Source: Vitrella brassicaformis CCMP3155 (lineage: Eukaryota; Protista; Chromerida). Taken from it: a stretch of DNA of 64,000 bases. Below, one piece after another: positions 3,274-21,672 of the stretch. The first letter of the stretch is position 1, and the number at the start of each line of letters is the position of its first letter. The stretch is from positions 1 through 64,000 of the forward strand of contig CDMY01001040.1 of assembly GCA_001179505.1 (NCBI GenBank), read 5' to 3'. Made by a program: the position numbers and the translations under genes. The notes beneath the pieces were generated by a model. That model had not been told where the DNA came from and did not search any database. It saw only the letters and a program-made list of their open reading frames with translations.

Positions 3274-3420
3274 CAAAGGTGATTCCAGAAGACGGCAGAT
3301 GCCCGGCTGCAAGACCGTCAGGAGGGATCTGGACACTGCATGTGTGGCGAGGATGGAGAGGATCCGGCTGCGGGATGGACAGTGGGCATCAGCGGGTCGG
3401 TGGCTTGAGGAGGTCTGCTG

Positions 3421-5742
3421 ATGGCGAAACTACACTGCTCACGTCAAGAAGAGGTAAGGGAGAGGGCGGGAAGACACAACAAAGAGGAACCGCAACCGTG
3501 GCTTCGCTTTTTTCGTGTTTGCCTGCAGGAGGATGTAGATGGGATGTTGGTTGAGGACGATGATGATGGCGATGAATGCCCACTGCCGAATCATGGACAG
3601 CAGGTGCGCAGGCACTGACAAACCACTCCATCTGCTTCGCTTTCCACACAAATTCAACGAAATACATGGGCCGTCTGTGTGTGGTGCTTCGTTGCTTTTG
3701 CAGTCGTCACTTCCCCTGTGGACTGTCCCGTCCGACACCATCTCGACCTTCCTCAGCCCCCTCCTGGGCACCCAATACATCATCGGCACCCTCTCACTCA
3801 TCCGCAAGGCCTTCCACACCATCGCTCCTGAGCCGTCCACCCACCTCTGCGTCCACATCCAGACTGCCAAGGCCATCAACCTGACCGACACGCAGCTCAG
3901 CGTATGGCTCACCCGACTAAGCAAGACCAAGCGCGCCGTGCTGCTCTGCCCGGTGACGGAGAGCATGGTGCTTCTGGTGGAGGGCACGAGCAACACCTTG
4001 ACCTACCTCGAGATGGACCATTCGGCATCAGAGCGGCACGGCACGCCCAGGCTGCTGTCAGTGCGTCAAGGGGCGTCTCTGGTGGAGTTCCCGGTGCTGG
4101 AGGAGGCGCGTGTGGGCGGCGACTGGGCGCAGGCGGCGCCACGCAAGCGATGGGCACTGAGGTAGGCGACAAGGCCAGCGAATGATACACCCAGCAGAAC
4201 AGTTCTCATGTGTGTGTGGTGTTGTTGATTGTGCGGCTTTGCGGGTCGCTCGTGTCATTGAGCGTTCGCGACTGCCGATTGCTGGCCCCCGTGATCGGTT
4301 TCGGTGTGTGGTGGCGTTCATTCGCGCCAGCCCTGCGGTCGCTCGAGTACGACGATGATGGGTGCTCGAGCACCCATCCGTACCCCCACAGCACGCTCCC
4401 GCTGCAGGAGCTTCTGCCGGTCACCACATCTGTGCCTGACCTGAGCGCCCTCAAGTGAGGAGCACGATAGAACCGAAACACGCGCGTGTATGTGTATCCC
4501 TTCATTCTTCTCTCTCAGGCGCCTTCGCTTCACCAGTGAGCGGTCGTGCTTCACCCACGGAGGAGGCACACGGCTGCTGGCTCAGCGCAGCCTCAGGCTG
4601 GAGGAGGTCGACATTGCATTGAACTCTCTGTCGACCGACTTACTCAAGGTAGCATTCTCTTTCACACACACAAGCAGACGGCACACGCACACATTCGCCA
4701 GGACACACCTCTGTCTGTCTGTCTGTCTGTGTGTTTGTTTGTTTGTCTCTGTACATGTGTGTGGCGTGCAGGCCATAGATGGGTTTCGCAAGTCTTGCCT
4801 CGCCCCCAACGCCATCGAGAACTGGAGCAGAAGCGACTTTCACTTCGACCTGAGTTCGCTGTTCGACTCATCGGACATGTCTGACGAGGTCCTTCGTAGC
4901 TGTGCGGGCACCATCAAGATCCTAGCTTCGGCAGCTACCTGGGCTGTCATGAGGACTCAGCTCACTGGCACACAGGTGTTCCATCTCGCACTCTATGGCC
5001 TCATCCCGTCACTCGTGTTTTCGCGAACACGCACTCTGTGGCTGTGCCGGCGCGCTAATGCTGGCCACGCCGGCGTTTTGCCACTGCCTGACGTGGTGTT
5101 GTCGAATGTGGCTCGCCTTTTCCCCTCGGTGACGCACACAGATGTGTTTGGTGCTGACATGTCCGATGCGCTCGTGCAGAGGGTGCTGGGGCAGCTCCCG
5201 ACGCTCGAGACATTGCGCTGTCCGGCCTCAGACACGTTTGACACGGACGTGGGGGATTTGGGATGGGCGAGGCAAGGCTTGAGGTTCTCACTGCATCAGA
5301 CAGAGCATCAGGGCAGGCCGATCGCTGAGAGAGTTCGTGAGGCCACCACGACCATGGATTGGGAGGAAAGTGAGACAGAGAGCTTCGTCTTAGCGTGTGA
5401 CCGACTCGTAGACAGATGTGTGCGAGCGATTCGTCGGTTTTGTCGCATCGATCGGCTTGTCGTCAATGTGAGTGATCCGTTTGAGGAGAGCCAGGAGGGG
5501 GGGACATGATCGTAGCCACAATGCAGGAGTGCATGGTGAGTCGGCCTGGCACAGCCGGTGCCAGCCGCCGACTCCCTTGTCACCTCCTGCTGCGTGAGCT
5601 TGGCTTCGAGATGGTCGAATTAGCGAGATTAGATAACCTCTGTCGGATGGAGGTGCGGCGGATGGGCCTGCCCATCTCCTCACAGAAGCGCATCTCCTCA
5701 CAGAAGCGCATCACTGACTACTTCTCTGTGGCCAACCAGTGA
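3421..5742 (+). CDS. Lineage-specific F-box-like/LRR-like protein with C-terminal PIP box (paralog A)
   Basis: GT-AG exons join ORFs 3421, 3539, 4210, 4490 and 5506 in frame. N-terminal LWTVPSDTISTFLSPLLGTQYIIGTLSLIRKAFHTIA is F-box-like. C-terminus is QKRITDYFSVANQ*. Clear paralogy with 13997-15507. Confidence 0.7.
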
Positions 5743-6229
5743 GACAGACATCGGCTGAAGGGCACAGCACAGCATAGCACAGATATGGGGCTGGGGTGCA
5801 CAGGCGGGGCGGGCAGTGGCCTTTACTTCCTCACGCGTGTCAATCCTTTCTGCGGCCTTTTCTGCATGTGCGTGTGTGGGCGGTCGGCGCCTCACCCATC
5901 AGCAGCTGGCCAGCTGCAGGTGGGTGATTCGTTGGCACACCCGCAGGGCCATGCAAAAGAGGCCGCTGCCGTGTGAATATATGGGTGTGCGGTTGAGACT
6001 CTTCATCATGTGCGAGCGCATGTGTGATGGCTTCAACACACGTGTACGCCAGCTGGCTTGTGGAAGTGCCGACAGTATCTTCAATGCATAGAATTGTGAG
6101 TCTGTGGTCGTGTCCGCACAGTGCACGCCACCCCACCCACGCATCAACGCACACATCAGCAAATAAATGGAGACAGTCATTCACAAGACAACAAGGCATG
6201 CACACACACAATGTACCATAGGCAGCCAG

Positions 6230-7477
6230 CTACCGAAAGCCAGGCGGTACAGGATACTCAGGGCTTTCCTCATTCTTCCTTCTCCTCTCCGGTACTGGCC
6301 TCTCCTCCCCCTCCCCCTCCCTCGTGCTTCCTGTCTGCCCTCCCTCCCCCGTGCTGCCTTCCTCCTGCCTGAGAGACTCATACACCTGCTTCCTCTGCTG
6401 CTGCCTCGCACGCTGCCTCCTCAGCTCAGCCCTGTCCATCACCTTAATGCCCTCCTCCTCGTCAAGCAGCTTCTCCAGCTGCTCTGTGACCTTCCTCTCC
6501 ACCCGGCTCTCCAACGCACTCTGCAGCCCGTCGCTCACCCTCCTGTCCGCCGGCCTGCTGGTGGCACTCAGCCCATCGAGCGTCTGCTGGATCGCCCGGA
6601 CGGTCTTGCTCTTCATGGCCCTCTTGCGCAACGACTCGAGCAGCCGGGGGTTCTTCCCTCTTTCCTCCCGCTTGGCCAGTCGCTGCACATAAGTGGCTAC
6701 CATCCACGCGTCAGACATGAAGTAGCTCGTGTCGTTGACGCCTCCGTCCTTGCGAGCGATGGTTGGGAAGTTGGGGATCTTCTCTTTGACGTACTCGAGC
6801 ACCTCGCTGCGGCTCTCGAGAAGACGGCCGGCGCGTGTGGCGAGGAACTCCCTGGCTGTGCGCAGGTAGACGGGGCGGGGCGACACGCCGAGCAGCCGCG
6901 GAATGTCATGCGAGAGGATGCCGACCAGCTTCTGGATCTCAGTGACCTTCTGCAGGTCCTTGCCCGGGTTGGGCACACGACTGTACTCCTGCATACCAAC
7001 CGTCCACTCGAGCAGCCTCTGGGGGTCGGCTGCCTGTGGCTGCTGGGCGTGCTGCGGGTGTTGCTGCGACAGCTCCTTAGTGAGCACTTGCAGCTGGCCC
7101 GTCTTCAGAACGTTGAGCACACCCATAACCTCCACGGCCTTCTCGTTGACGTTGGGCAGACTCGACAGGTCGATGAGGCCCACCTTCAGAGGCTTCGTGT
7201 CATAAGTCATGAGCGCATACCCGGCGCAGTGACGCGACACGCAGAGGCCCAGCACCAGCCGCCTTCTCAGATCCACGTTGGCGTGCGGCTGCTGCCCATC
7301 GCCATCATCGTCGGCATTGCTGTCGCTCTCTGGGGCGAAGAAGGGGCTGGGGCTGGTGGGAGATGAGGATGCATCGGAGGAGAAGCCGCGTTGATGAGAT
7401 AGATGAGATGAACAGCATCTTCTGATTTGCCGCCTTGAGGAATGGAGCAGGCACAAAGATCTTGCAGACGGCAACAT
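6230..7477 (-). CDS. RuvC/YqgF (RNase H-fold) domain protein with probable mitochondrial presequence, single exon
   Basis: Long ORF with likely start MLPSARS at 7477. R/S-rich leader, then RLVLGLCVSRHCAGYALM (beta1-beta2 pattern), WTVGMQEY and YFMSDAWMVA (final helix), followed by a coiled-coil tail. Confidence 0.6.
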   Translation of the reverse strand: MLPSARSLCLLHSSRRQIRRCCSSHLSHQRGFSSDASSSPTSPSPFFAPESDSNADDDGDGQQPHANVDLRRRLVLGLCVSRHCAGYALMTYDTKPLKVGLIDLSSLPNVNEKAVEVMGVLNVLKTGQLQVLTKELSQQHPQHAQQPQAADPQRLLEWTVGMQEYSRVPNPGKDLQKVTEIQKLVGILSHDIPRLLGVSPRPVYLRTAREFLATRAGRLLESRSEVLEYVKEKIPNFPTIARKDGGVNDTSYFMSDAWMVATYVQRLAKREERGKNPRLLESLRKRAMKSKTVRAIQQTLDGLSATSRPADRRVSDGLQSALESRVERKVTEQLEKLLDEEEGIKVMDRAELRRQRARQQQRKQVYESLRQEEGSTGEGGQTGSTREGEGEERPVPERRRKNEESPEYPVPPGFR

Positions 7478-7546: not shown

Positions 7547-7778
7547 AATGCGGCCGAGGAAGCCGTCATCATCTCGTGAGGTCTTGTGAGCAAGATCTGG
7601 GCAAGATGCATCTTCCCGCATGAGAGATCTCCTTCCCCTGGTTGCACAGCTGTTGTCGCTTCAGAAGACCATCTGCGCACCTGCACTCCGTCACTCCCTG
7701 CCCTGCTTCATCCCCTCATTGTCCATCCCGTCAAGGCTCCTCCACCAGCCCTCATCCCTCAGCCGCTCACGCATTGTG

Positions 7779-9172
7779 ATGGACCCCTCGGAGACCCATC
7801 TGGCCACGGCAGCGGTGGGCGATATCGAAGATATCGCCGCCGATGCAGAGGCCACCATGGCGCGAGGGAGATGGCGAACAGTCATGAAGGGGCTGCTCAA
7901 GACGGCCTACTCATCTGCCGTGATGCAGGAGGCTGCTGCTGAAGAGGACAAGGGCAAGAAGCGGAGAAGGGCCAAGCCTCGGGAGGCGACGTCAGCTGCT
8001 GATGGCGACGACGAGAAGTCACCAGCTGCCCCAAAGAAGAAGCAGAGGAAGAACACAAAAGGGCAGAAGATGGCCTTAGAGGAGGAGGAGGGAGATGGCG
8101 AGGGTGAAGCTGTGGCGGGAAAGAGAAAGAGGTCGCGGTCGAGAGCGGCGGCCAAGGGTAACGCGCCTGATGTGGGGCTGGTGAGGGAGGTGACGTCTGT
8201 GCTGGAGCAGACACACGGGATGGTGGTCAAGGAGGAGAATGTTAGCAACGCATGCGGACACAAGAGGGAGGTCCTCGATGCAGCTGTGGTCAGTCTAAGA
8301 CACACACACGGCATGGCATGCACACCTTAACGTCTCGCCTGTTTGTCTGTCATGTAGGCGTTGGTGCTGAGCCAGAACACCTCCAACAAGAACTCCTCCC
8401 GTGCCTTGGCTTCTCTCCGTGCCAAGTATCCCTCGTTCGCCGCCATCCGCACTGCGCCTGCAAAGGAAGTCGAGGAGACCATACAGGCGGTAAGGTAGTA
8501 CGACAGACAGACAGCTAATGTCATTCGTGTTTCGTGGCCCTATATATGTGCAGGGTGGCCTTGCTACGGTCAAGACGAAGCGCATCCAGGCCCTCCTGCA
8601 GGGCATCTATGACAGGCATGGCGCCTGCTCACTGGAGCACTTGAGGGACATGACGACCGAGGCCGCCAAGGAGGAGCTGGCCACCTACACCGGGATCGGC
8701 CCCAAGAGCATCGCATGCCTTCTCATGGTACGGGGCAGGCGAAATGGCTGACTGGTAACGATCGCATTGTCTGTGCGTGGCCATCATCATGTGTGTGCAT
8801 GCAATGCAGTTCACGCTGCATCGCCCCGAGTTCGCAGTGGACACCCACGTCCATCGGCTGTGCAACCGCATATTCGACACCGAGACCAAGACGGCTGACC
8901 ACACGTACCGCCTCATGAACAGCGTCGTCCCCGATGACCAGAAACACGACCTCCATGTGCTGCTCATCCGCCACGGCCGGCGAGTGTGTCGGGCCATCAA
9001 CCCCCAGTGCCATTCGTGCCCCCTGGCCGAGACCCGCTGTGCGTACTTCCGCAAGAAACAAGCAGGGAATGGTGAGGGGGTCGAGGCCGAGATTGAGGGT
9101 GGGGAGGAGGGGGCAGGTGCGGCTGATAGAGGGGAGGATGGTGAAGAGGTTCGGGCAGATGCGAACGAGTGA
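7779..9172 (+). CDS. HhH-GPD base-excision DNA glycosylase (endonuclease III-like) with FeS cluster motif
   Basis: Spliced LVLSQNTSNKNSSRA, GGLATVK, HhH TGIGPKSIACLLM, AVDTHVHR, LLIRHGRRVCRAINPQCHSCPLAETRC. Basic low-complexity N-terminal tail. Confidence 0.9.
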
Positions 9173-11493: not shown

Positions 11494-12837
11494 ATGGCGT
11501 CGGCCACCAAGTGGGATTCGACCTTGTCTGAGCCCATATCCCGGAAGCCCCATCCCCACCCTCACAACATGCTGTACTACGGCAAGTGCATGATCGGCGG
11601 CATCATGAGCTGCGGCTTCACCCACACGGCCGTGGTGCCCCTGGACGTGACCAAGTGCAAGATGCAGGTCTTCCCCCAGAAGTACACCGGCCTCTTCTCG
11701 GGCATCCGGACCATCGTGGCCGAGGAGGGCATGGGCGGCCTGGCGCTGGGCTGGCTGCCCACCTTCATCGGCTACTCCATGCAGGGGCTCTGCAAGTTCG
11801 GCTTCTACGAGCTCTTCAAGGACGTCTACGCCAACGCGGCGGGCGAGGAGAATGCGGCCAAGTACAAGGGCTTCCTTTGGCTGGGGGCGAGTGCGAGCGC
11901 CGAGTTCTTCGCCGACATCGCCCTGTGCCCCATGGAGATGGTCAAGGTCAAGGTGCAGACGTCACCAGCGGGCACGTGGCCGACAGACCTCGTTGGCGCC
12001 ACCAGCAAGATGGTCGAGAAGAGCGCAGAGACCAGATTCCCGGTGAGTGAGTGAGTGAGTGAGGGGATGAATGGCGGGGCAGGGCGGGCAGAGATCGATG
12101 TGTGTGGATGTGTGTCAGTTTGGCAGTGTGGTTCCGTTGTGGAGTCGGCAGATCCCGTACACCATGGCCAAGTTTTATTTCTTTGAGAAGTGCGTGCAGC
12201 TCTTCTACGACAACGTCTTCACACAGCCCAAGGACACCTACTCCAAACCCACACAACTCGGGGTCACATTCGCATCAGGTGAATGAAGGACACACACGCA
12301 GAGGCAGGGAGGGAGGAGGGGAGGCCTACACGTGTGTGGACTTACCTTTCATGTGTGTGTGTGGATGTGTGTGTGTGGTCAGGTTACTTGGCTGGCGTGA
12401 TCTGTGCGGTCGTGTCCCACCCCGCGGACAACCTGGTCTCGCAGCTGGGCAAGGCGGAGCACAAAGGCAAAGGGTACACACCGACGGCCGCTCACGCATG
12501 ACCTCATGTGGGCGATATGATGGATGTCTGTGTCCTGTGTTGTGTGTTGGTTCGTAACTTCATTCAGATTGGGTCAGATAGCGTCAGAGGTGGGTGCGTG
12601 GAATCTGTGCACCAAGGGCATCGGCACCCGTATCCTCATGATCGGCACACTCACCGGCCTCCAGTGGTGGATCTACGACACATTCAAGGTGCGATGCGAC
12701 ACACAAATGCTGCCCGGTCTCACACGCGACACAGGCCATCCACTCTCTCTCTCTCTCTCTCTCTGTGCGCTCTCTGTGCGCAGACTGCGATGGGTATGGG
12801 GACGACGGGGGGCGGGACGGCCAAGAAGGCCGCCTGA
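11494..12837 (+). CDS. SLC25A3: Mitochondrial phosphate carrier (SLC25/PiC/MIR1)
   Basis: GGIMSCGFTHTAVVPLDVTKCKMQ, GWLPTFIGYSMQGLCKFGFYELFK, ASAEFFADIALCPMEMVKVKVQT, PLWSRQIPYTMAKF, VSHPADNLVS, RILMIGTLTGLQWWIYD. Confidence 0.97.
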
Positions 12838-13888: not shown

Positions 13889-15507
<1,619 letters not shown>

Positions 15508-15702
15508 GGAGCATCACACACACAGATCGGCAAACCAATGGCAATTTGGCTCACATGTTCGCCGCCGCCCTCCTCTCTCTCACCTCTTTGCTTGTGCGTC
15601 GCTTCTTGCTTGAATGCGCCATCACGTCCACCGGCGGGTGACGGTTGTTGCTTCTGCACAGCGCGCGTAGGATCCAGGGTTCAACCCTCAACCCGAGGTT
15701 TG

Positions 15703-15803: not shown

Positions 15804-17631
15804 ATGAATAAGGACATCTCAGTGCATGAGATCTCGGGAACGACGTACGTGGGACTGTACCAGCCAGCACCACCATGCAACAGCCATGCAATGCCATCCA
15901 TCCGTGTGATCTTGTTGCTGTATGTGGTTATCTCATCTGTGCAGGTTCCTTGTGGACTTCTTCCGCCGCCCTCTGACGCCTCCGCGGACCTTCTTCCTAT
16001 CGCACTACCATGGCGACCACTACAGCGGCATCACAGACCGCTGGGACAGGGGCGTCATCCACTGCTCACCCATCACGGCCCGCCTGCTGCTCGAGATCAT
16101 GGCGGTGGCACCCCGGTATGTCAAAGCGATGGCCCTGGACGTGGCGCACGACATGGGTGACGGGCATAAGGTGACGCTCATCGACGCGCATCACTGCCCG
16201 GGTGAGCATGGAGGGATGGATGGATGGATGGGTGAGGGGCCGGTGCGGTTGTGCGCGTGCGTGTGCGCAGGTGCGGTGATGTTTCTCTTTGAGCTGTCGA
16301 GTGGGAAGGCCTTCCTGCACACCGGTGACTTCCGCTTCCATCCACGCATACTCCAGCACCCAGCACTGCAACACAAAAAGGTACATACGTGCACAAGTTG
16401 CAGAGACGACCGTCTTATGCATGTTCGCTGCCTGTGTTCGTTGGCCGTGGCTGTCAGATCGACGGCATCTATCTCGACACCACCTACAGCCACCCCAAGC
16501 ACGTCTTCCCTCCGCAGGAAACCGCCATCCAGTCCATCGTCGACGTCATACAGGAGACACTGGCCAGCGAGCGGCCGCCGAACACCCCCCCTCTCGTCGG
16601 TCTGGCACCCCTGGCCGCGTCGAAAGCTGACGCGGCTGGGGAGACAGCCAATGACGGAGGGGAGGAGCTGCTGGAGGGAGAGGTGAGGTCGCCCGAGGCG
16701 AGTGCTGCCGCCGCCGCAGCAGCAGCTGCTGCTGCTGCATCTGGGGGTGAGGGGGAGGAAGATGTGGAGCGGATTCCGAAGAGGACGCTCTTCCTTGTCA
16801 GCGCCTACACGATTGGTAAGAGAGGTGAGGAGGGTCCCCTTTCGTTGATGGAGTGTGTTCTGGCGTGTTTGTGTGTGTGTGTGGTCAGGGAAGGAAAAGA
16901 TCCCACTCGCGGTCGCAAAGACGTGTGGAGTCAAGATCTACCTAGAGGAAAGAAAGGTCGGCAACCTAACCAGTGCGTCAATCGTCAGTTCATTGCAATC
17001 ACGCCACCTGTCTGTTTTTGGCTGTGTCGACGGATGGAATGGCTGAATACAGTCTCGCATTTTCCGTTGCCTGGGCATGGCTGACGAGGACATCGCTGCC
17101 TTCACCACTGACCCCGCAGCCACGCCTGTGCACGTGGTCGGCATGGATATGTGCGGCGAGATGTGGCCCTTCTTCCGACCCAACTTCGCCAACCTCGAAA
17201 GCTACCTGGAGAAACACAATCTCATCAGGACCTACAGCCACGTCACGGGTGAGGGAGACCAGGAGGCGGCGGTCGGGCGAGTGAGGCAGGTGTCTCTTCT
17301 CGTGTTGTGTGGTCAGGTTTCATCCCCACTGGATGGGCTGAGTCGAGCAACTGGAATCGCAAAAACGCTGTCAAGTAAGGAGAATAAGGCGCGTGTGTGA
17401 GAATGGACAGGTGTCTGCATTTCTTGTCTGCTTGCTTCCGTCTGTGTGTGGCGCGGCGGTCAGGACGAGGGGTCATTATGAGGTCCGTCTTTACGCCTAC
17501 TCGGAGCACTCCAATTTCCAGGAGCTCGTTACCTTTGTTGACACGCTCAAACCCACACAAGTGGTGAGAGGGCGATCTGAGAGAGCCTTCCATTGTACGA
17601 CCGATCGCACATACGATCCTGTGTCTGCCTC

Positions 17632-17662
<31 letters not shown>

Positions 17663-20600
17663 CCCGACTGTCTTCTCGGATGACAACGATCGCAAGAACA
17701 TCCTCAAACGATTCCAACCACACCTGGTCAGCTGCCGCAGACCCACGCACATAGACCTGCTGCCCTGTCACCATTCCTCATTCTCTGCCGGGCCACTTTC
17801 TCCTCCAGAACAAGACTGCCGGTGTGCGTGCCTTCCTGGACAAGCACTTCCGCAACAACAACAACAACAACAACAACAATGGCGGCAACGGCGCCGCCCA
17901 AAGCTCCGCTGACCCGTCCCCATCAAACCACAACAGTCGACACCAAGACGGCCCCACCGATCCCGTCGTCATCGATGACGACGACGAGCAGGAAGACGCC
18001 GGCCAGCCCCCTCCCCCACCTCCCCAAGAAGCGGAGCCATCATCAGCATCGTCACACAAGCGCAAGGACCTCCCACCCGAGCCCTCCCCTCCCCCGGACA
18101 GCAAACGGCCCAAGCAGCAGCAAGAGCCGGACGATGACGTGATCGAGCTTGACGGCGATGATGACGATCAGGACATGCCTGACGCACCCGCACCGTCAGC
18201 GGCAGCAGCTGCCGCTGCTGCAGCAGCAGGGGGAGGGGCAGGAGCACCCAAGAAGGTCGCCCTGCGGAGCGCCCCTGCGCCCAAGGGCATGTCGAAGGCC
18301 AAGGCCAAGCCGAAGGCGAAGGGGAACGGCAAAGGGGGGAGAGGCAAGGGCGGCAAGAAGGGGTCAGGGGCGGCGAGCAAGGACAAAGGCGGCACGCAGG
18401 CCTCCATCATGTCCTTCTTTGGCAAGCCCAAGGCGGCCAAGGAAGACACCGGCGGCGGCCCCTCTCCCAGCAATGGCAAGAAGCAGCACGGACGCGAGCC
18501 ACAGCCACCACCACCACCAGCAGAGCCACCAGCAGCAGCTGCCGCAGCAGCAGCGGCAGCAGCCATCTCAATCAACGACACATCGAGCCGACCAGCCGAC
18601 GAAGGACGCGCCAACGAACACGAGGAGAAGCCCCCGCCAGCCCCCAAACCCGCCCCCGCCCCCGCAGCCTTCCTCTGCTGTCGTGCCGAGACCGTCACTC
18701 TTGGCAGCGATCCCGAGGACCTGGAGGCTCTCTATGAGGGCAAGAGCGGCACCGGCTCCACCCCATACCTGGCCCTCTCGCGCACATACGAGTGGATTGA
18801 GGCCATTACGGGTCGGCTCAAGATCATCGGACACCTGGCCAGGCTGTTTGAGCTGATTCTGCGGCGGGCGGAGGGGGATTTGTTGGCGGCCATTTACCTG
18901 ACGACGAATCGCATAGCGCCGCCGTGGGAGGCGGGGGAGCTGGGGGTGGGCAGCAGTGTGCTGGGCAAGGCCGTCATCGAGACGACGGGCAAGACCAGCC
19001 ACACACTCGGACAGATGTAAGCAGAGAGAGATCGAGATCCGCACAGATGGAAGGTGTGTGTCTTGTCTTGTCTTGTCTTGTCTTGTGTTGTGTTGTGTGC
19101 AGGTACACGCGTCTGGGTGACTTCGGCGATGTGGCGCAGGAGTGTGCCGGCAGTGTGCGGATGCTCTTCAAGCCCAAGCCCTTGAGCGTGCAGGACGTCT
19201 ACACCGGCCTCAGGAAGATCGCCGCACTCACAGGCGCCAAGTCGCAAGAGAGCAAGAGGAACATCGTCAAGGTCCGTTCCCACCTCGCAATCTCTCTCCT
19301 TGACGCACCTCTCTTCGTCCATCCATTCATTGATGCCATGTTGTCAGGGGTTGCTCGTCCGCTGTCGAGAGAAGGAGACGCGCTACCTCGTCCGCACTCT
19401 CGGGCAGCATCTGCGGATCGGCGCCGTGGCCAAGACAGTGCTGGCGGCCCTCGCACAGGCGATCGAGAAGGACAAGGCCAAGCAAGAGCGGGCGGCCAAG
19501 GCACTGGCACGGGCCTACTCAGAGTGCCCCTCGTTCGACATCCTGGTGGCTGAGCTGCTGCAGGGGCGCAGGGAAGGTCAGTCGCCTCACACACTGCAGA
19601 CAAGGGCGAGCAATGAAAAGCCCCAGAGGGGTGTGTGTGTGTCAGGTGGCAGTGGGTGGGAGAGGGTTGAGGAGCAGTGCATCCTACGACCAGGGACGCC
19701 CATCCGCCCTCAGCTGGGCCAGATCACCAGATCCATCCCAGACCTACTCAAACGGTACAAGTGTGGAGACACAGAGACGCTGCAATACGGCCGGCCTCTC
19801 ACCATGAGTGCATTCGGTCTTGCCCATCTGTGTGCGCAGCTTCACGCGTGAGGGCGCGACGGCGATCAGCTGCGAGTTCAAGTATGACGGTCAGCGCGCG
19901 CAGATCCACCTGATGAAGGCGGACAGCAGCACGGCGCCGCCGGCCGATGGGCAGAGGAAGATCGATGGCAGCGATGATGCCGGCGGAAGTGACGGGCTGA
20001 CGTTCAAGGTGTTCTCTCGGCACCTGGAGGACGTCACCGTCAGGTTCGCCGACATCATGGACCACATCAGGTGGGTGAACGGATGGATGGATGGGCAGCG
20101 ATTGCCATTGACTCATCCATTCATCTGTCGGATGTGGCGTGTGTACAGGGAGGCATTGTCAGGTCCCCTGGAGTCGTGTGTGCTGGACGCTGAGCTGGTG
20201 GCGGTGGACCCCTCCCCGCCGCACCGGCTGCTGCCCTTCCAGACACTCACCGGCCGCTCCCGCAAACAGGTCGACAGGAGCATACCCGTCTGCGTCTTCC
20301 TTTTCGGTCAGTGAGAGGGCGAGCGAGCCAGGCAGGGCGGGGCAGGGCAGTCCACACCCCAGAGGCTGACGTGCCCTTCCCATCTTGCGTGCAGACATGC
20401 TGTATCTTAATGGCGAGCCCTTGCTGACCAAGACCCTCGCCGAGCGCCGCACACTCATGCACCAGCAGTTCCACGAGGTCGACGGGGAGTTCCGATTCGC
20501 GCGGGAGAAGACCATCTCCCTCACCGCCAATGGTGACAATGCAGACGCAGCCGTAGATGTAGAGGCAGAGGGAGAGGTGGGCGTGAGTGAGGAGGCGGGT

Positions 20601-21672
20601 GCGGAGGTCGAGGCGACGGTGGAGAAGTGGCTGCACGAGTCGCTGCGTGAGGGGTGTGAGGGGCTCATGTGCAAGGCCCTCGACGGGCGCCTCGCCACCT
20701 ATGAGCCCACCAAGCGGAGCGAAGGATGGGCCAAGATCAAGAAGGACTACATCGAGGGAGTCGCTGACAGCCTCGACCTCGTGAGTGAAGATGGATGGAG
20801 GGAGGGACAGAGCAGCCAGCCCACATGAAGACGGCTCTCTCTGTGTGCGGTCGTCTCTCTTTCCAGGTGCCGATTGGTGCGTGGTGGGGCAATGGTCGGA
20901 AGGCAGGCTGGTTCAGCCCCTATTTGCTGGCGTGCGTCACGCCTGACGGCGAGATGCAGAGCGTCTGCAAAGTCATGAGCGGCTTCACCGACGAGCAGTA
21001 CCGCGAGTTTCTGGCCTTCTACAAGGATGGCGGCCGCATCATCCCGCAGCCCAAGAGCTTCTACGACGTCACCGATGACCTCATCCCCTCGGTGTGGTTC
21101 GAGCCGTGCCAGGTACAGGCCCACACGCCATACAGAGACACATAGAAGCCTCTTTCTGACGTGTGTCTGGTGTGTGTGTGTTCAGGTGTGGGAGATCCGC
21201 GGCGCCGATCTGACGATATCTCCCAAGCACTCGGCAGCCAGGGGCCTCGTGGATCCCACCAAAGGCATCAGCCTTAGATTCCCAAGGTATGTAAACAATC
21301 GAAGGATGACAAAACAACCATACCAGACACACACACATACGATTGTCATCCTTCCCCTCCTTGCCGTCGATCAGGTTCATCCAAGTGCGGCAGGACAAGG
21401 CAATCGAGGACGCCACCACACCCGACTATATCGCTCGTCTCTTTGAGCGTCAGGTGACCCGCCAGCCCGCTGCAGCACCAGCAGCACCGGCTGCAGGACC
21501 AGCAGCAGCAGCGGCCAGAGCGGACAATGACGATGACGAGGAGTCTGATGAGCCGGGCTCGCCGCGGCAGGGCGGTGGGGGTGCAGATGCGGACAAGTAT
21601 GCGCAGCCCGCAGGGATGGCCGCCAGCTCGAGCAGCGCTGCTGCCGCTGCTGCTGCTGGTGGAACGATTTAG
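15804..21672 (+). CDS. LIG6: SNM1/Artemis-type metallo-beta-lactamase/beta-CASP nuclease fused to an ATP-dependent DNA ligase (plant LIG6 architecture)
   Basis: MBL motifs [28 protein letters not shown]. In-frame splice (KRFQPHL|NKTAG) into a linker with QASIMSFF. Ligase motifs [62 protein letters not shown]. Confidence 0.88.

What the first reader, a model, noticed from the sequence alone, without database searches (positions are those of the whole stretch)
3421..5742. F-box-like/LRR-like protein ending in a perfect PCNA-binding PIP box: candidate PCNA-tethered SCF adaptor family
Seen: an N-terminal F-box-like helix pattern, LRR-like segments (LAQRSLRLEEVDI, LGQLPTLETLRCP) and a C-terminal QKRITDYF at 5701-5724. 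The diverged paralog at 14 kb ends in QRKITDYF, sharing 19 identical nt (ATCACTGACTACTTCTCTG), the best-conserved patch I saw between the two. Established: Q-x-x-I-x-x-Y-F is the canonical PIP box. TD at positions 5-6 marks high-affinity PIP boxes and CRL4-Cdt2 PIP degrons; the degron's +4 basic residue is absent here. F-boxes bind Skp1. Inference: an expanded lineage-specific family that may bring SCF ubiquitylation to replication or repair forks, or compete for PCNA. I do not know of such a family being described.
Basis: partly seen in the sequence, partly recalled or inferred. Interest (0 to 1): 0.8.

Follow-up and report, generated by a model that had tools for sequence, protein, structure and literature searches.

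The report
Vitrella F-box/LRR genes with PIP tails
The alga Vitrella brassicaformis has its own family of F-box-like/leucine-rich-repeat proteins, one branch of which ends in a motif that fits the DNA sliding clamp PCNA; in the copy flagged here a frameshift cuts that motif off from the main reading frame, and the neighbouring copy is a gene relic.

Summary
The window is the first 64 kb of Vitrella brassicaformis CCMP3155 contig CDMY01001040.1. The octapeptide codons (QKRITDYF, 5701-5724; QRKITDYF, 14012-14035, minus strand) and the shared 19 nt are real.

3421-5742 is not one ORF. It is a spliced six-exon gene whose main frame stops at 5507-5509. The PIP tail lies in the -1 frame behind a 1-nt loss at a G7 run (5497-5503). 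DNA and RNA contigs of four runs agree on this. The 14-kb copy is a relic: two in-frame TGA and most of the LRR region missing.

The family is real and was found only in Vitrella (at least 22 loci). Predicted structure is an LRR solenoid whose best matches are TIR1, COI1, MAX2, FBXL and SKP2. F-box sequence evidence stays below threshold. One clade (11 loci, 9 intact) keeps Q-x-x-I-T-D-[YF]-F at the C-end despite about 25-35% identity elsewhere. The sister clade (7) has a different tail.

P0005 ends in QKKITDYF, the core of a peptide that binds human PCNA at about 0.14 µM. Binding by these proteins is untested.

Unexplained: only the frameshifted copy has a very stable hairpin 10 nt after the G7 run, a -1 frameshift-like layout.

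The scan already found this family on other DNA of this genome (s1-197158).

The parts
3421..3453 (+). Exon 1 of gene 1 (MAKLHCSRQEE), start codon at 3421
   Evidence: RNA joint 3451>3527, GT..AG, gives intron 3454-3528. Same N-terminus as P0029 and P0002.
3529..3603 (+). Exon 2, acidic linker
   Evidence: RNA joint 3599>3700, GT..AG, in runs X1 and X7 gives intron 3604-3703.
3704..4161 (+). Exon 3: F-box-like helices (about 3707-3830) and the first LRR turns. This is the best-conserved part of the family.
   Evidence: phmmer gave 22 family hits. Family consensus from alignments A1/A3. AF2 domain model pLDDT 83.
4243..4244 (+). Mutated acceptor of intron 3: GG here, AG in the intact sister locus L009
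   Evidence: Alignment of window against L009. RNA joint 4160>4244 with non-canonical ends in X7. The X1 contig starts at 4259, which fits use of a cryptic acceptor at 4262.
4245..4454 (+). Exon 4. The start is 4245 (conserved ..RSLVSLS..) or 4263 (cryptic acceptor, 6 codons shorter).
4519..4648 (+). Exon 5 (LRR; contains LAQRSLRLEEVDI)
   Evidence: RNA joints 4454>4519 and 4646>4770, both GT..AG, in X1 and X7.
4772..5509 (+). Exon 6: LRR body (contains LGQLPTLETLRCP). The main frame ends ..EESQEGGT at stop TGA 5507-5509.
   Evidence: The transcript-derived proteins P0001, P0023 and P0024 end the same way.
5497..5503 (+). G7 run at the frameshift: net loss of 1 nt relative to intact paralogs. 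Formally a G GGG GGG heptamer in the 0 frame.
   Evidence: No indel here in the DNA or RNA contigs of 4 runs.
5514..5600 (+). Very stable predicted RNA stem-loop 10 nt after the G7 run, specific to this copy
   Evidence: MFE -53.5 kcal/mol, z -5.3 to -5.8. Equivalent regions of six intact paralogs give z +0.5 to -2.8. Only 0.19% of 97-nt windows in the window fold this well.
5503..5742 (+). Tail in the -1 frame: C-terminal cap module (..LLLRELGFEMVEL..) plus the PIP box, stop at 5740-5742
   Evidence: Colinear with the C-ends of P0002, P0028 and P0029.
5674..5709 (+). Perfect 18-nt tandem duplication (ISSQKR twice) that includes the first codons of the PIP box. Absent from the paralogs.
5701..5724 (+). 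PIP-box codons QKRITDYF, followed by SVANQ (no basic residue at +4)
13997..15622 (-). Relic paralog. N-terminal stump 15055-15622 ends at TGA. Middle piece is 14350-14763. Tail 13997-14266 carries QRKITDYF at 14012-14035.
   Evidence: The intact relative P0004 has Cys at the first TGA position.

Best explanation
Gene 1 and the 14-kb copy belong to a gene family found only in Vitrella. The proteins have three parts: a short three-helix, F-box-like N-terminal module, an LRR solenoid of about 450 residues with a small C-terminal cap, and a short floppy tail.

In one clade the tail is a TD-type canonical PIP box (Q-x-x-I-T-D-[YF]-F) within the last 3-22 residues. The most likely working model (inferred) is that intact members dock on chromatin-loaded PCNA through this tail. 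There they use the LRR surface to hold a partner or substrate, probably as the substrate receptor of an SCF-type ubiquitin ligase via the F-box-like module.

In this window neither copy is intact (shown). Gene 1 is transcribed and spliced, but a 1-nt loss at a G7 run stops its frame at 5509, so its main product is a PIP-less protein of about 550 aa. It also has a mutated intron-3 acceptor and an 18-nt duplication. It is therefore most likely a recently damaged, possibly decaying copy of its intact sister P0029. The 14-kb copy is a pseudogene relic.
For: Gene structure and expression:
- Spliced RNA contigs confirm introns 1, 2, 4 and 5.
- The stretch 5098-5900 is unspliced and free of indels.

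Frameshift:
- P0002 and P0029 are colinear across the site.
- Transcript-derived P0001, P0023 and P0024 end at ..EESQEGGT.

Family:
- 22 representatives among 1.84 billion proteins. All named ones are Vitrella; further members came.

Fold:
- AF2 of P0002 gives pLDDT 76 and pTM 0.74.
- Foldseek ranks TIR1, COI1, D3/MAX2, FBXL2 and SKP2 first, E 1e-7 to 1e-3.
- VIA gives Z 10-11.6 to LRR proteins, including FBXL17, FBXL2 and SKP2.

F-box:
- The best language-model neighbours are F-box clusters, scores 0.93-0.95.
- UniRef names P0003, P0004 and P0016 'F-box domain-containing'.
- The N-terminal helices overlay the F-box of FBXL17, FBXL3, KDM2A/B and TIR1, at Z 5.3-6.9.

PIP box:
- The motif is invariant at Q, I, T, D and F in 11 loci.
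- These loci form one side of a 100/100 split and are separated by branches of about 1 change per site.
- The tail is low-confidence and floppy in the model.
- P0005's QKKITDYF equals the core of the PL peptide, which binds human PCNA with Ki 0.136 µM and has a co-crystal, 1VYJ (PMC4103810).
- TD confers high affinity (PMC3973308).
- The DNA ligase gene in the same window carries a classic QASIMSFF, so Vitrella uses PIP boxes conventionally.
- P0005 mRNA is full length in a transcript contig.
Against: - Pfam F-box-like is matched by only 1 of 13 members, at E 0.013. None of gene 1's exons match.
- A profile of the N-terminal motif finds no F-box chain in the PDB.
- The N-terminal domain alone gives no significant Foldseek match, and its VIA Z values tie with generic LRR proteins.
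- No binding to Skp1 or PCNA was or could be tested.
- Seven family members have another tail without the motif.
- Both copies in this window are damaged, so this locus itself may do nothing.
Confidence: 0.55

Rival explanations
1. Gene 1 is not dead at its 3' end. A share of ribosomes slips -1 on G GGG GGG (5497-5503), helped by the stem-loop at 5514-5600, or a minor splice removes 5468-5526. The gene would then make both a PIP-less and a PIP-bearing isoform.
For: - A -1 slip gives exactly the conserved join..QEGGDMIVATMQEC.. against P0029's ..QAGGDIARVLQEC...
- The hairpin has z -5.3 to -5.8 and is absent from six intact paralogs. Only 0.19% of windows fold as well.
- The 79-codon tail frame is still open and 60% identical to P0002's tail.
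- 5468-5526 has a consensus GTGAGT donor and a TGCAG acceptor. The reference annotation ends its 488-aa model at 5742.
Against: - GGG in the A site is a poor slippery codon in tested eukaryotic systems (my own knowledge).
- The 10-nt spacer is longer than the usual 5-9 nt.
- No spliced 5467>5527 contig is seen in either RNA run, whereas real introns are spliced out there.
- The gene carries other lesions.
- Hairpins this strong occur about once per 6-8 kb. Another sits at 5857-5959.
Confidence: 0.12
2. The tail is a destruction signal rather than a tether. PIP-clade proteins are loaded on PCNA and then ubiquitylated by CRL4-Cdt2, so they are removed in S phase or after damage, as for Cdt1, p21, Set8 and FBH1.
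For: - All 11 motifs carry the TD pair, which is rare outside CRL4-Cdt2 substrates (PMC3973308).
- P0029 has the full degron, with R at +4 (SVAR).
- Most others have K/R at +2, +3 or +5.
- FBH1, an F-box protein, is regulated this way (PMC3711418).
Against: The defining +4 basic residue is missing in 10 of 11 loci, including gene 1 (N), P0028 (N), P0004 (Q) and P0012, which ends at +3.
Confidence: 0.2
3. These are LRR scaffold proteins, not F-box proteins. The N-terminal helices are only an LRR cap, and the proteins bind PCNA as adaptors or competitors without any SCF ligase.
For: Sequence models for the F-box fail or are marginal. The structural scores of the N-terminal part (Z 5.3-6.9) lie in the range of common arrangements and tie with TLR, CD14 and internalin.
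Against: - F-box/LRR ligase subunits rank first for both the whole model and the N-terminal domain model.
- The language-model neighbours are consistently F-box clusters.
- The L-P-[DE]-x-h-h ... L ... h-h ... L pattern of the F-box is conserved family-wide.
Confidence: 0.25
4. The conserved C-terminal octapeptide has a function unrelated to PCNA, for example another docking site or a sorting signal.
For: No binding data exist for any member. PIP-like motifs can bind other partners (PMC6881253).
Against: The motif meets every position of the canonical consensus, plus TD. It sits at a floppy terminus. One member is identical to the core of a peptide crystallised on PCNA.
Confidence: 0.08

Closest known systems
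FBXL-type F-box/LRR substrate receptors of SCF ligases (SKP2, FBXL2, FBXL17, plant TIR1/COI1/MAX2)
   Same: Predicted architecture: three N-terminal helices followed directly by an LRR solenoid. These are the top structural matches.
   Different: No significant sequence-model match to the F-box. The repeats are irregular. There is a C-terminal cap module and a PIP tail. The family is restricted to one genus.
Cdt2 (DCAF receptor of CRL4) with a C-terminal PIP box
   Same: A cullin-ligase substrate receptor that parks itself on PCNA through a PIP box at its C-terminal end (PMC6312923).
   Different: Cdt2 is a WD40 DCAF on CUL4-DDB1, single-copy and widely conserved. Here we have an F-box-like/LRR protein, multi-copy, in one lineage only.
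FBH1 (F-box DNA helicase 1)
   Same: An F-box protein that binds PCNA through a PIP box (PMC3711418).
   Different: FBH1's body is a UvrD-type helicase, and its motif acts as a degron for CRL4-Cdt2. There is no LRR and no family expansion.
TRAIP (RING E3) with a PCNA-interacting motif
   Same: A ubiquitin ligase brought to forks by PCNA binding (PMC4923944).
   Different: A RING ligase, not an SCF receptor. Single gene.
Pogo transposase / PL peptide / p21-type high-affinity PIP boxes
   Same: Same octapeptide class. The PL peptide core QKKITDYF is identical to the end of P0005 and one conservative change from gene 1's QKRITDYF. It binds human PCNA at about 0.14 µM (PMC4103810).
   Different: The carrier proteins are unrelated (a transposase, a CDK inhibitor).
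Replisome-tethered LRR receptors Dia2 (SCF, yeast) and LRR1 (CUL2, animals)
   Same: LRR substrate receptors of cullin ligases that act at the replisome (PMC12242765, abstract, for CUL2-LRR1; Dia2 from my own knowledge).
   Different: They are tethered by TPR or other contacts, not by a PIP box. They are single-copy and conserved, with a known substrate (Mcm7).

Membership tests
F-box proteins (Pfam PF00646/PF12937, PROSITE PS50181) | Significant match of a 40-50 residue N-terminal module to an F-box sequence model | tested here: inconclusive
   Gene 1 exons: no hit at E<10. Of 13 members, 1 hits F-box-like at E 0.013, below the cut-off. A profile against the PDB finds nothing. UniRef names 3 members 'F-box domain-containing'. 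The ESM feature neighbours are F-box clusters.
F-box proteins | Three-helix F-box fold placed directly before the substrate-binding domain | tested here: inconclusive
   AF2 shows three helices before the first LRR strand, pLDDT 63-81 in the domain model. They overlay the F-box of FBXL17, FBXL3, KDM2A/B and TIR1, but at Z 5.3-6.9 only.
F-box proteins | Binding to SKP1 | not testable with these tools
   No complex prediction or experiment is available here.
LRR solenoid proteins | Repeated strand-turn-helix units forming a curved solenoid | tested here: met
   AF2 of P0002 shows alternating strands and helices, pTM 0.74. VIA Z 10-11.6 to many LRR structures. Foldseek E down to 1e-7. Pfam LRR models do not hit.
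Canonical PIP-box proteins | Q-x-x-[ILMV]-x-x-[FY]-[FY] | tested here: met
   Met in 11 loci. Gene 1 has QKRITDYF, but in the -1 frame relative to the body of the gene. Consensus from PMC6881253 and PMC3973308.
Canonical PIP-box proteins | Motif in a flexible region, typically at a terminus | tested here: met
   The motif ends 3-22 residues from the C-end in all intact members. Residues 565-579 of the P0002 model have pLDDT <50.
Canonical PIP-box proteins | Direct binding to PCNA | not testable with these tools
   Only indirect evidence: an identical octapeptide core binds human PCNA (PMC4103810).
PIP degron (CRL4-Cdt2 substrates) | TD at motif positions 5-6 | tested here: met
   Present in all 11 loci.
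PIP degron (CRL4-Cdt2 substrates) | Basic residue at +4 after the second aromatic residue | tested here: not met
   Gene 1 has N at +4. Only P0029 (R) meets it; 10 of 11 loci do not. Definition from PMC3973308.
-1 programmed ribosomal frameshift signal | X XXY YYZ heptamer in the 0 frame, 5-9 nt spacer, stable downstream structure, conserved trans-frame product | tested here: inconclusive
   The heptamer G GGG GGG is present and in phase. The spacer is 10 nt. The structure is strong and copy-specific. The trans-frame product would be the conserved tail. G-only heptamers are poor slip sites (my own knowledge). There is no translation evidence.

The most novel reading that the evidence does not exclude
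Gene 1 is a recoded gene rather than a dying one. A cellular -1 ribosomal frameshift (G GGG GGG, then 10 nt, then a -53 kcal/mol stem-loop that evolved only in this copy) would set the ratio between a PIP-less F-box/LRR protein and a PCNA-docking isoform. This would sit within a Vitrella-only family of PCNA-parked SCF receptors.
Probability: 0.1. Interest if true: 0.8.

Novelty: new variant of a known kind. Interest (0 to 1): 0.5.

Why it matters
Ubiquitin-ligase subunits that park on PCNA are known only as single, conserved genes (Cdt2, TRAIP, FBH1). A multi-copy, fast-evolving F-box-like/LRR family has not been described in the papers I could search, particularly one in which a whole clade keeps a top-affinity PIP box while everything else diverges.

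If the tails bind PCNA and the N-termini bind SKP1, Vitrella would have a diversified set of replication-fork-targeted substrate receptors. Vitrella is a free-living relative of apicomplexan parasites. Such a set could be a way to sample many targets at the fork: foreign DNA factors, mobile-element proteins, or cell-cycle regulators.

For this locus the practical message is about annotation. The reference model that reaches the PIP box needs an intron that RNA does not support, and the neighbouring copy is a pseudogene.

Tried and rejected
1. My first gene model placed a 59-nt sixth intron at 5468-5526 to join the frames. I rejected it as the main form. RNA contigs of X1 and X7 run straight through it, three transcript-derived proteins end at the 0-frame stop, and intact paralogs have no intron there.
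2. Both TGA codons of the 14-kb copy might have been selenocysteine, since at least the first aligns with Cys. I rejected this because the copy also lacks about 300 residues and changes frame.
3. Mobile-element or segmental-duplication origin. Only the coding region matches between loci. The neighbours are ordinary genes: mitochondrial carrier, HhH-GPD glycosylase, SNM1-ligase.
4. Pfam on single exons and on 13 members gave no usable F-box or LRR hit.
5. A family profile and an N-terminal-motif profile against PDB sequences gave nothing.
6. The tail peptide against PDB sequences gave only chance hits, because the query is too short.
7. A search with the C-terminal 80 residues of P0002 for other carriers of the tail module found only close family members.
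8. dN/dS on the tail was not attempted. Divergence from the nearest intact copies (67-74% nt identity) predates the frameshift and would not be informative.

Full report
**What the DNA is.** The window equals the first 64 kb of contig CDMY01001040.1 of Vitrella brassicaformis CCMP3155, with the same coordinates. Vitrella is a photosynthetic relative of apicomplexans. GC content is about 58%.

**Observation.** The codons for QKRITDYF are at 5701-5724 (+) and those for QRKITDYF at 14012-14035 (-). The shared 19-mer occurs exactly twice, with none expected by chance. tblastn confirms a paralog on the minus strand at about 14.0-15.6 kb.

3421-5742 is not an open frame. It is a spliced gene. RNA contigs of two runs (X1, X7) show GT..AG joints that define introns 3454-3528, 3604-3703, 4455-4518 and 4649-4771. 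I first joined the last two frames with a 59-nt intron at 5468-5526, but that does not hold, for three reasons:
- The RNA contigs are colinear with the genome over 5098-5900 (X1) and 5323-5725 (X7), and carry no indel.
- The same is true of the two runs that show no spliced joints.
- Three transcript-derived proteins (P0001, P0023, P0024) end at ..EESQEGGT.

**The break is a frameshift.** Intact paralogs read straight through. P0002 has ..GQEDIVATLQQ.. and P0029 has ..QAGGDIARVLQEC.. where gene 1 has ..QEGGT-stop in one frame and DMIVATMQEC.. in the -1 frame. Relative to the P0029 locus, gene 1 has lost one nucleotide next to a G7 run at 5497-5503.

Gene 1 has two more lesions. The intron-3 acceptor is GG instead of AG at 4243-4244, and there is a perfect 18-nt tandem duplication at 5674-5709. 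Its 5' half, including introns and upstream DNA, is 89% identical to the P0029 locus, while its 3' half is 66.5% identical. It is therefore a mosaic.

**The 14-kb copy.** It has two in-frame TGA codons and frame changes. It retains only the parts matching residues 13-189 and 500-595 of its intact relative P0004. The reference annotation calls two stumps of 127 and 135 aa and leaves the PIP-coding end unannotated. It is a relic.

**The family.**
- An exhaustive HMMER search with exon 3 found 22 representatives among 1.84 billion proteins.
- All of those that carry a name are Vitrella. A search with the tail module added P0027-P0029.
- Members are dispersed, with some pairs on the same contig.
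- A maximum-likelihood tree of 16 members, with C-terminal tails removed from those that have them, splits them 100/100 into two groups.
- One group (P0002, P0027, P0029, gene 1, P0004, P0005, P0008, P0026, P0012) carries the PIP tail.
- The other group (P0007, P0009, P0010, P0017, P0018, P0019, P0022) has a different conserved tail and no PIP. This also holds in the genomic DNA downstream of truncated models.
- Counting P0028 and the relic, 11 loci carry Q-x-x-I-T-D-[YF]-F, and 9 of them are intact.
- Within that clade, branches are about 0.2-1.5 changes per site, yet Q, I, T, D and the final F never change.
- Even the codons ATC ACT GAC TAC TTC are the same in 6 of the 9 loci with DNA in hand.

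**Fold.**
- AlphaFold2 of P0002 with the family alignment gives pLDDT 76 and pTM 0.74. The model shows three N-terminal helices, a long run of strand/helix units, a small cap and a low-confidence tail.
- Foldseek ranks TIR1, COI1, D3/MAX2, FBXL2 and SKP2 first. VIA-align gives Z 10-11.6 to many LRR proteins. The LRR body is therefore well supported.
- The F-box is plausible but not shown. Pfam is sub-threshold and profile searches of the PDB are blank.
- A separate model of the N-terminal 170 residues (pLDDT 83) gives no significant Foldseek hit. F-box/LRR ligase subunits still lead both lists, and its helices overlay their F-boxes at Z 5.3-6.9.
- Language-model neighbours are F-box clusters, and UniRef names three members as F-box proteins.

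**The tail as a PIP box.**
- It meets the canonical consensus and carries the TD pair, which confers high affinity (PMC3973308 and PMC6881253).
- P0005 ends in QKKITDYF. This is the core of the PL peptide, which was crystallised on human PCNA (1VYJ) and binds with Ki 0.136 µM (PMC4103810).
- The +4 basic residue of the degron is present only in P0029.
- As an internal control, the SNM1-DNA-ligase gene in the same window carries the classic ligase motif QASIMSFF at 18397-18420.

**Mechanism.** My best reading is that intact PIP-clade members dock on loaded PCNA and present an LRR surface there, probably as SCF receptors. The steps inferred are PCNA binding, SKP1 binding and ligase function. The steps shown are the family, the motif conservation, the predicted fold, expression of several members, and the damage to both copies in this window.

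**An unexplained point.**
- The frameshift site has the layout of a -1 frameshift signal. G GGG GGG is in phase, and a -1 slip gives exactly the conserved join.
- Ten nucleotides later there is a stem-loop of -53.5 kcal/mol, z -5.3 to -5.8.
- The equivalent stretch of six intact paralogs is unremarkable, z +0.5 to -2.8.
- Only 0.19% of 97-nt windows in the window fold as well.
- Against a programmed event: G-only heptamers slip poorly in tested systems (my own knowledge), the spacer is long, the gene has other lesions, and an equally strong palindrome sits at 5857-5959.
- I put about 0.1 on recoding.

**Known relatives and novelty.** PCNA-docked ligase subunits are known: Cdt2 (PMC6312923), TRAIP (PMC4923944) and FBH1 (PMC3711418). 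Searches of the held literature gave no paper on an F-box/LRR family with PIP tails or on these Vitrella proteins. I class this as a new variant of a known kind.

The scan had already noted and followed up the same family on another piece of this genome (s1-197158), and my independent tests agree with that note. What this window adds is the frameshifted copy with its hairpin, the relic, and the two-clade structure.

Noticed in passing
window 15804-21672 (+); PIP motif at 18397-18420: An SNM1/PSO2-type metallo-beta-lactamase (Lactamase_B_2 weak, DRMBL above cut-off) is followed on the same strand by DNA ligase N, M and C domains. The reference annotates this as one 1462-aa gene. That matches the architecture of plant LIG6 (my own knowledge). 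A classic ligase PIP box, QASIMSFF, lies between the two halves.
   Followed up: partly
window 5857-5959 (+): The strongest local fold of the whole window is a long imperfect palindrome (-61 kcal/mol, z -5.3), about 115 nt after gene 1's tail stop. It lies between gene 1 and the convergent gene at 6230-7477 (-). It may be a 3'-end or termination element.
   Followed up: partly
window 3303-4455 versus 4542-5900, compared with L009: Gene 1 is a mosaic relative to the P0029 locus. It is 89% identical over the upstream region, exons 1-4 and their introns, but only 66.5% identical over the 3' half. This suggests gene conversion or recombination between paralogs.
   Followed up: partly
window 5710-5724, 14012-14026; L001, L002, L003, L005, L007: The codons of I-T-D-Y-F are nearly identical at nucleotide level in eight of the nine loci compared (ATC ACT GAC TAC TTC in six; one synonymous T in L003 and in L007). 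This includes the non-preferred ACT, despite about 70% identity in the flanks. L006 differs.
   Followed up: partly
proteins P0001, P0023, P0024 (JGI transcript assemblies): Three transcript-derived proteins share gene 1's 3' part but carry different N-terminal variants. One variant is identical to P0029. These are probably chimeric assemblies of near-identical paralogs, or several alleles.
   Followed up: no
window 7620-9172 (+), 6230-7477 (-), 11494-12837 (+): The neighbours are ordinary genes: an HhH-GPD DNA glycosylase, a 415-aa protein with no Pfam match, and a mitochondrial carrier. Two DNA-repair genes (the glycosylase and the SNM1-ligase) lie within 15 kb of the two family copies. This may be coincidence.
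   Followed up: no
ALT-tail clade: P0017, P0018, P0022; loci L010-L012: The sister clade replaces the PIP tail with a longer conserved tail (..DD-x-VSL-x-EALLAHAGL..) of unknown function. Most of its members also have an N-terminal coiled-coil-like extension.
   Followed up: partly
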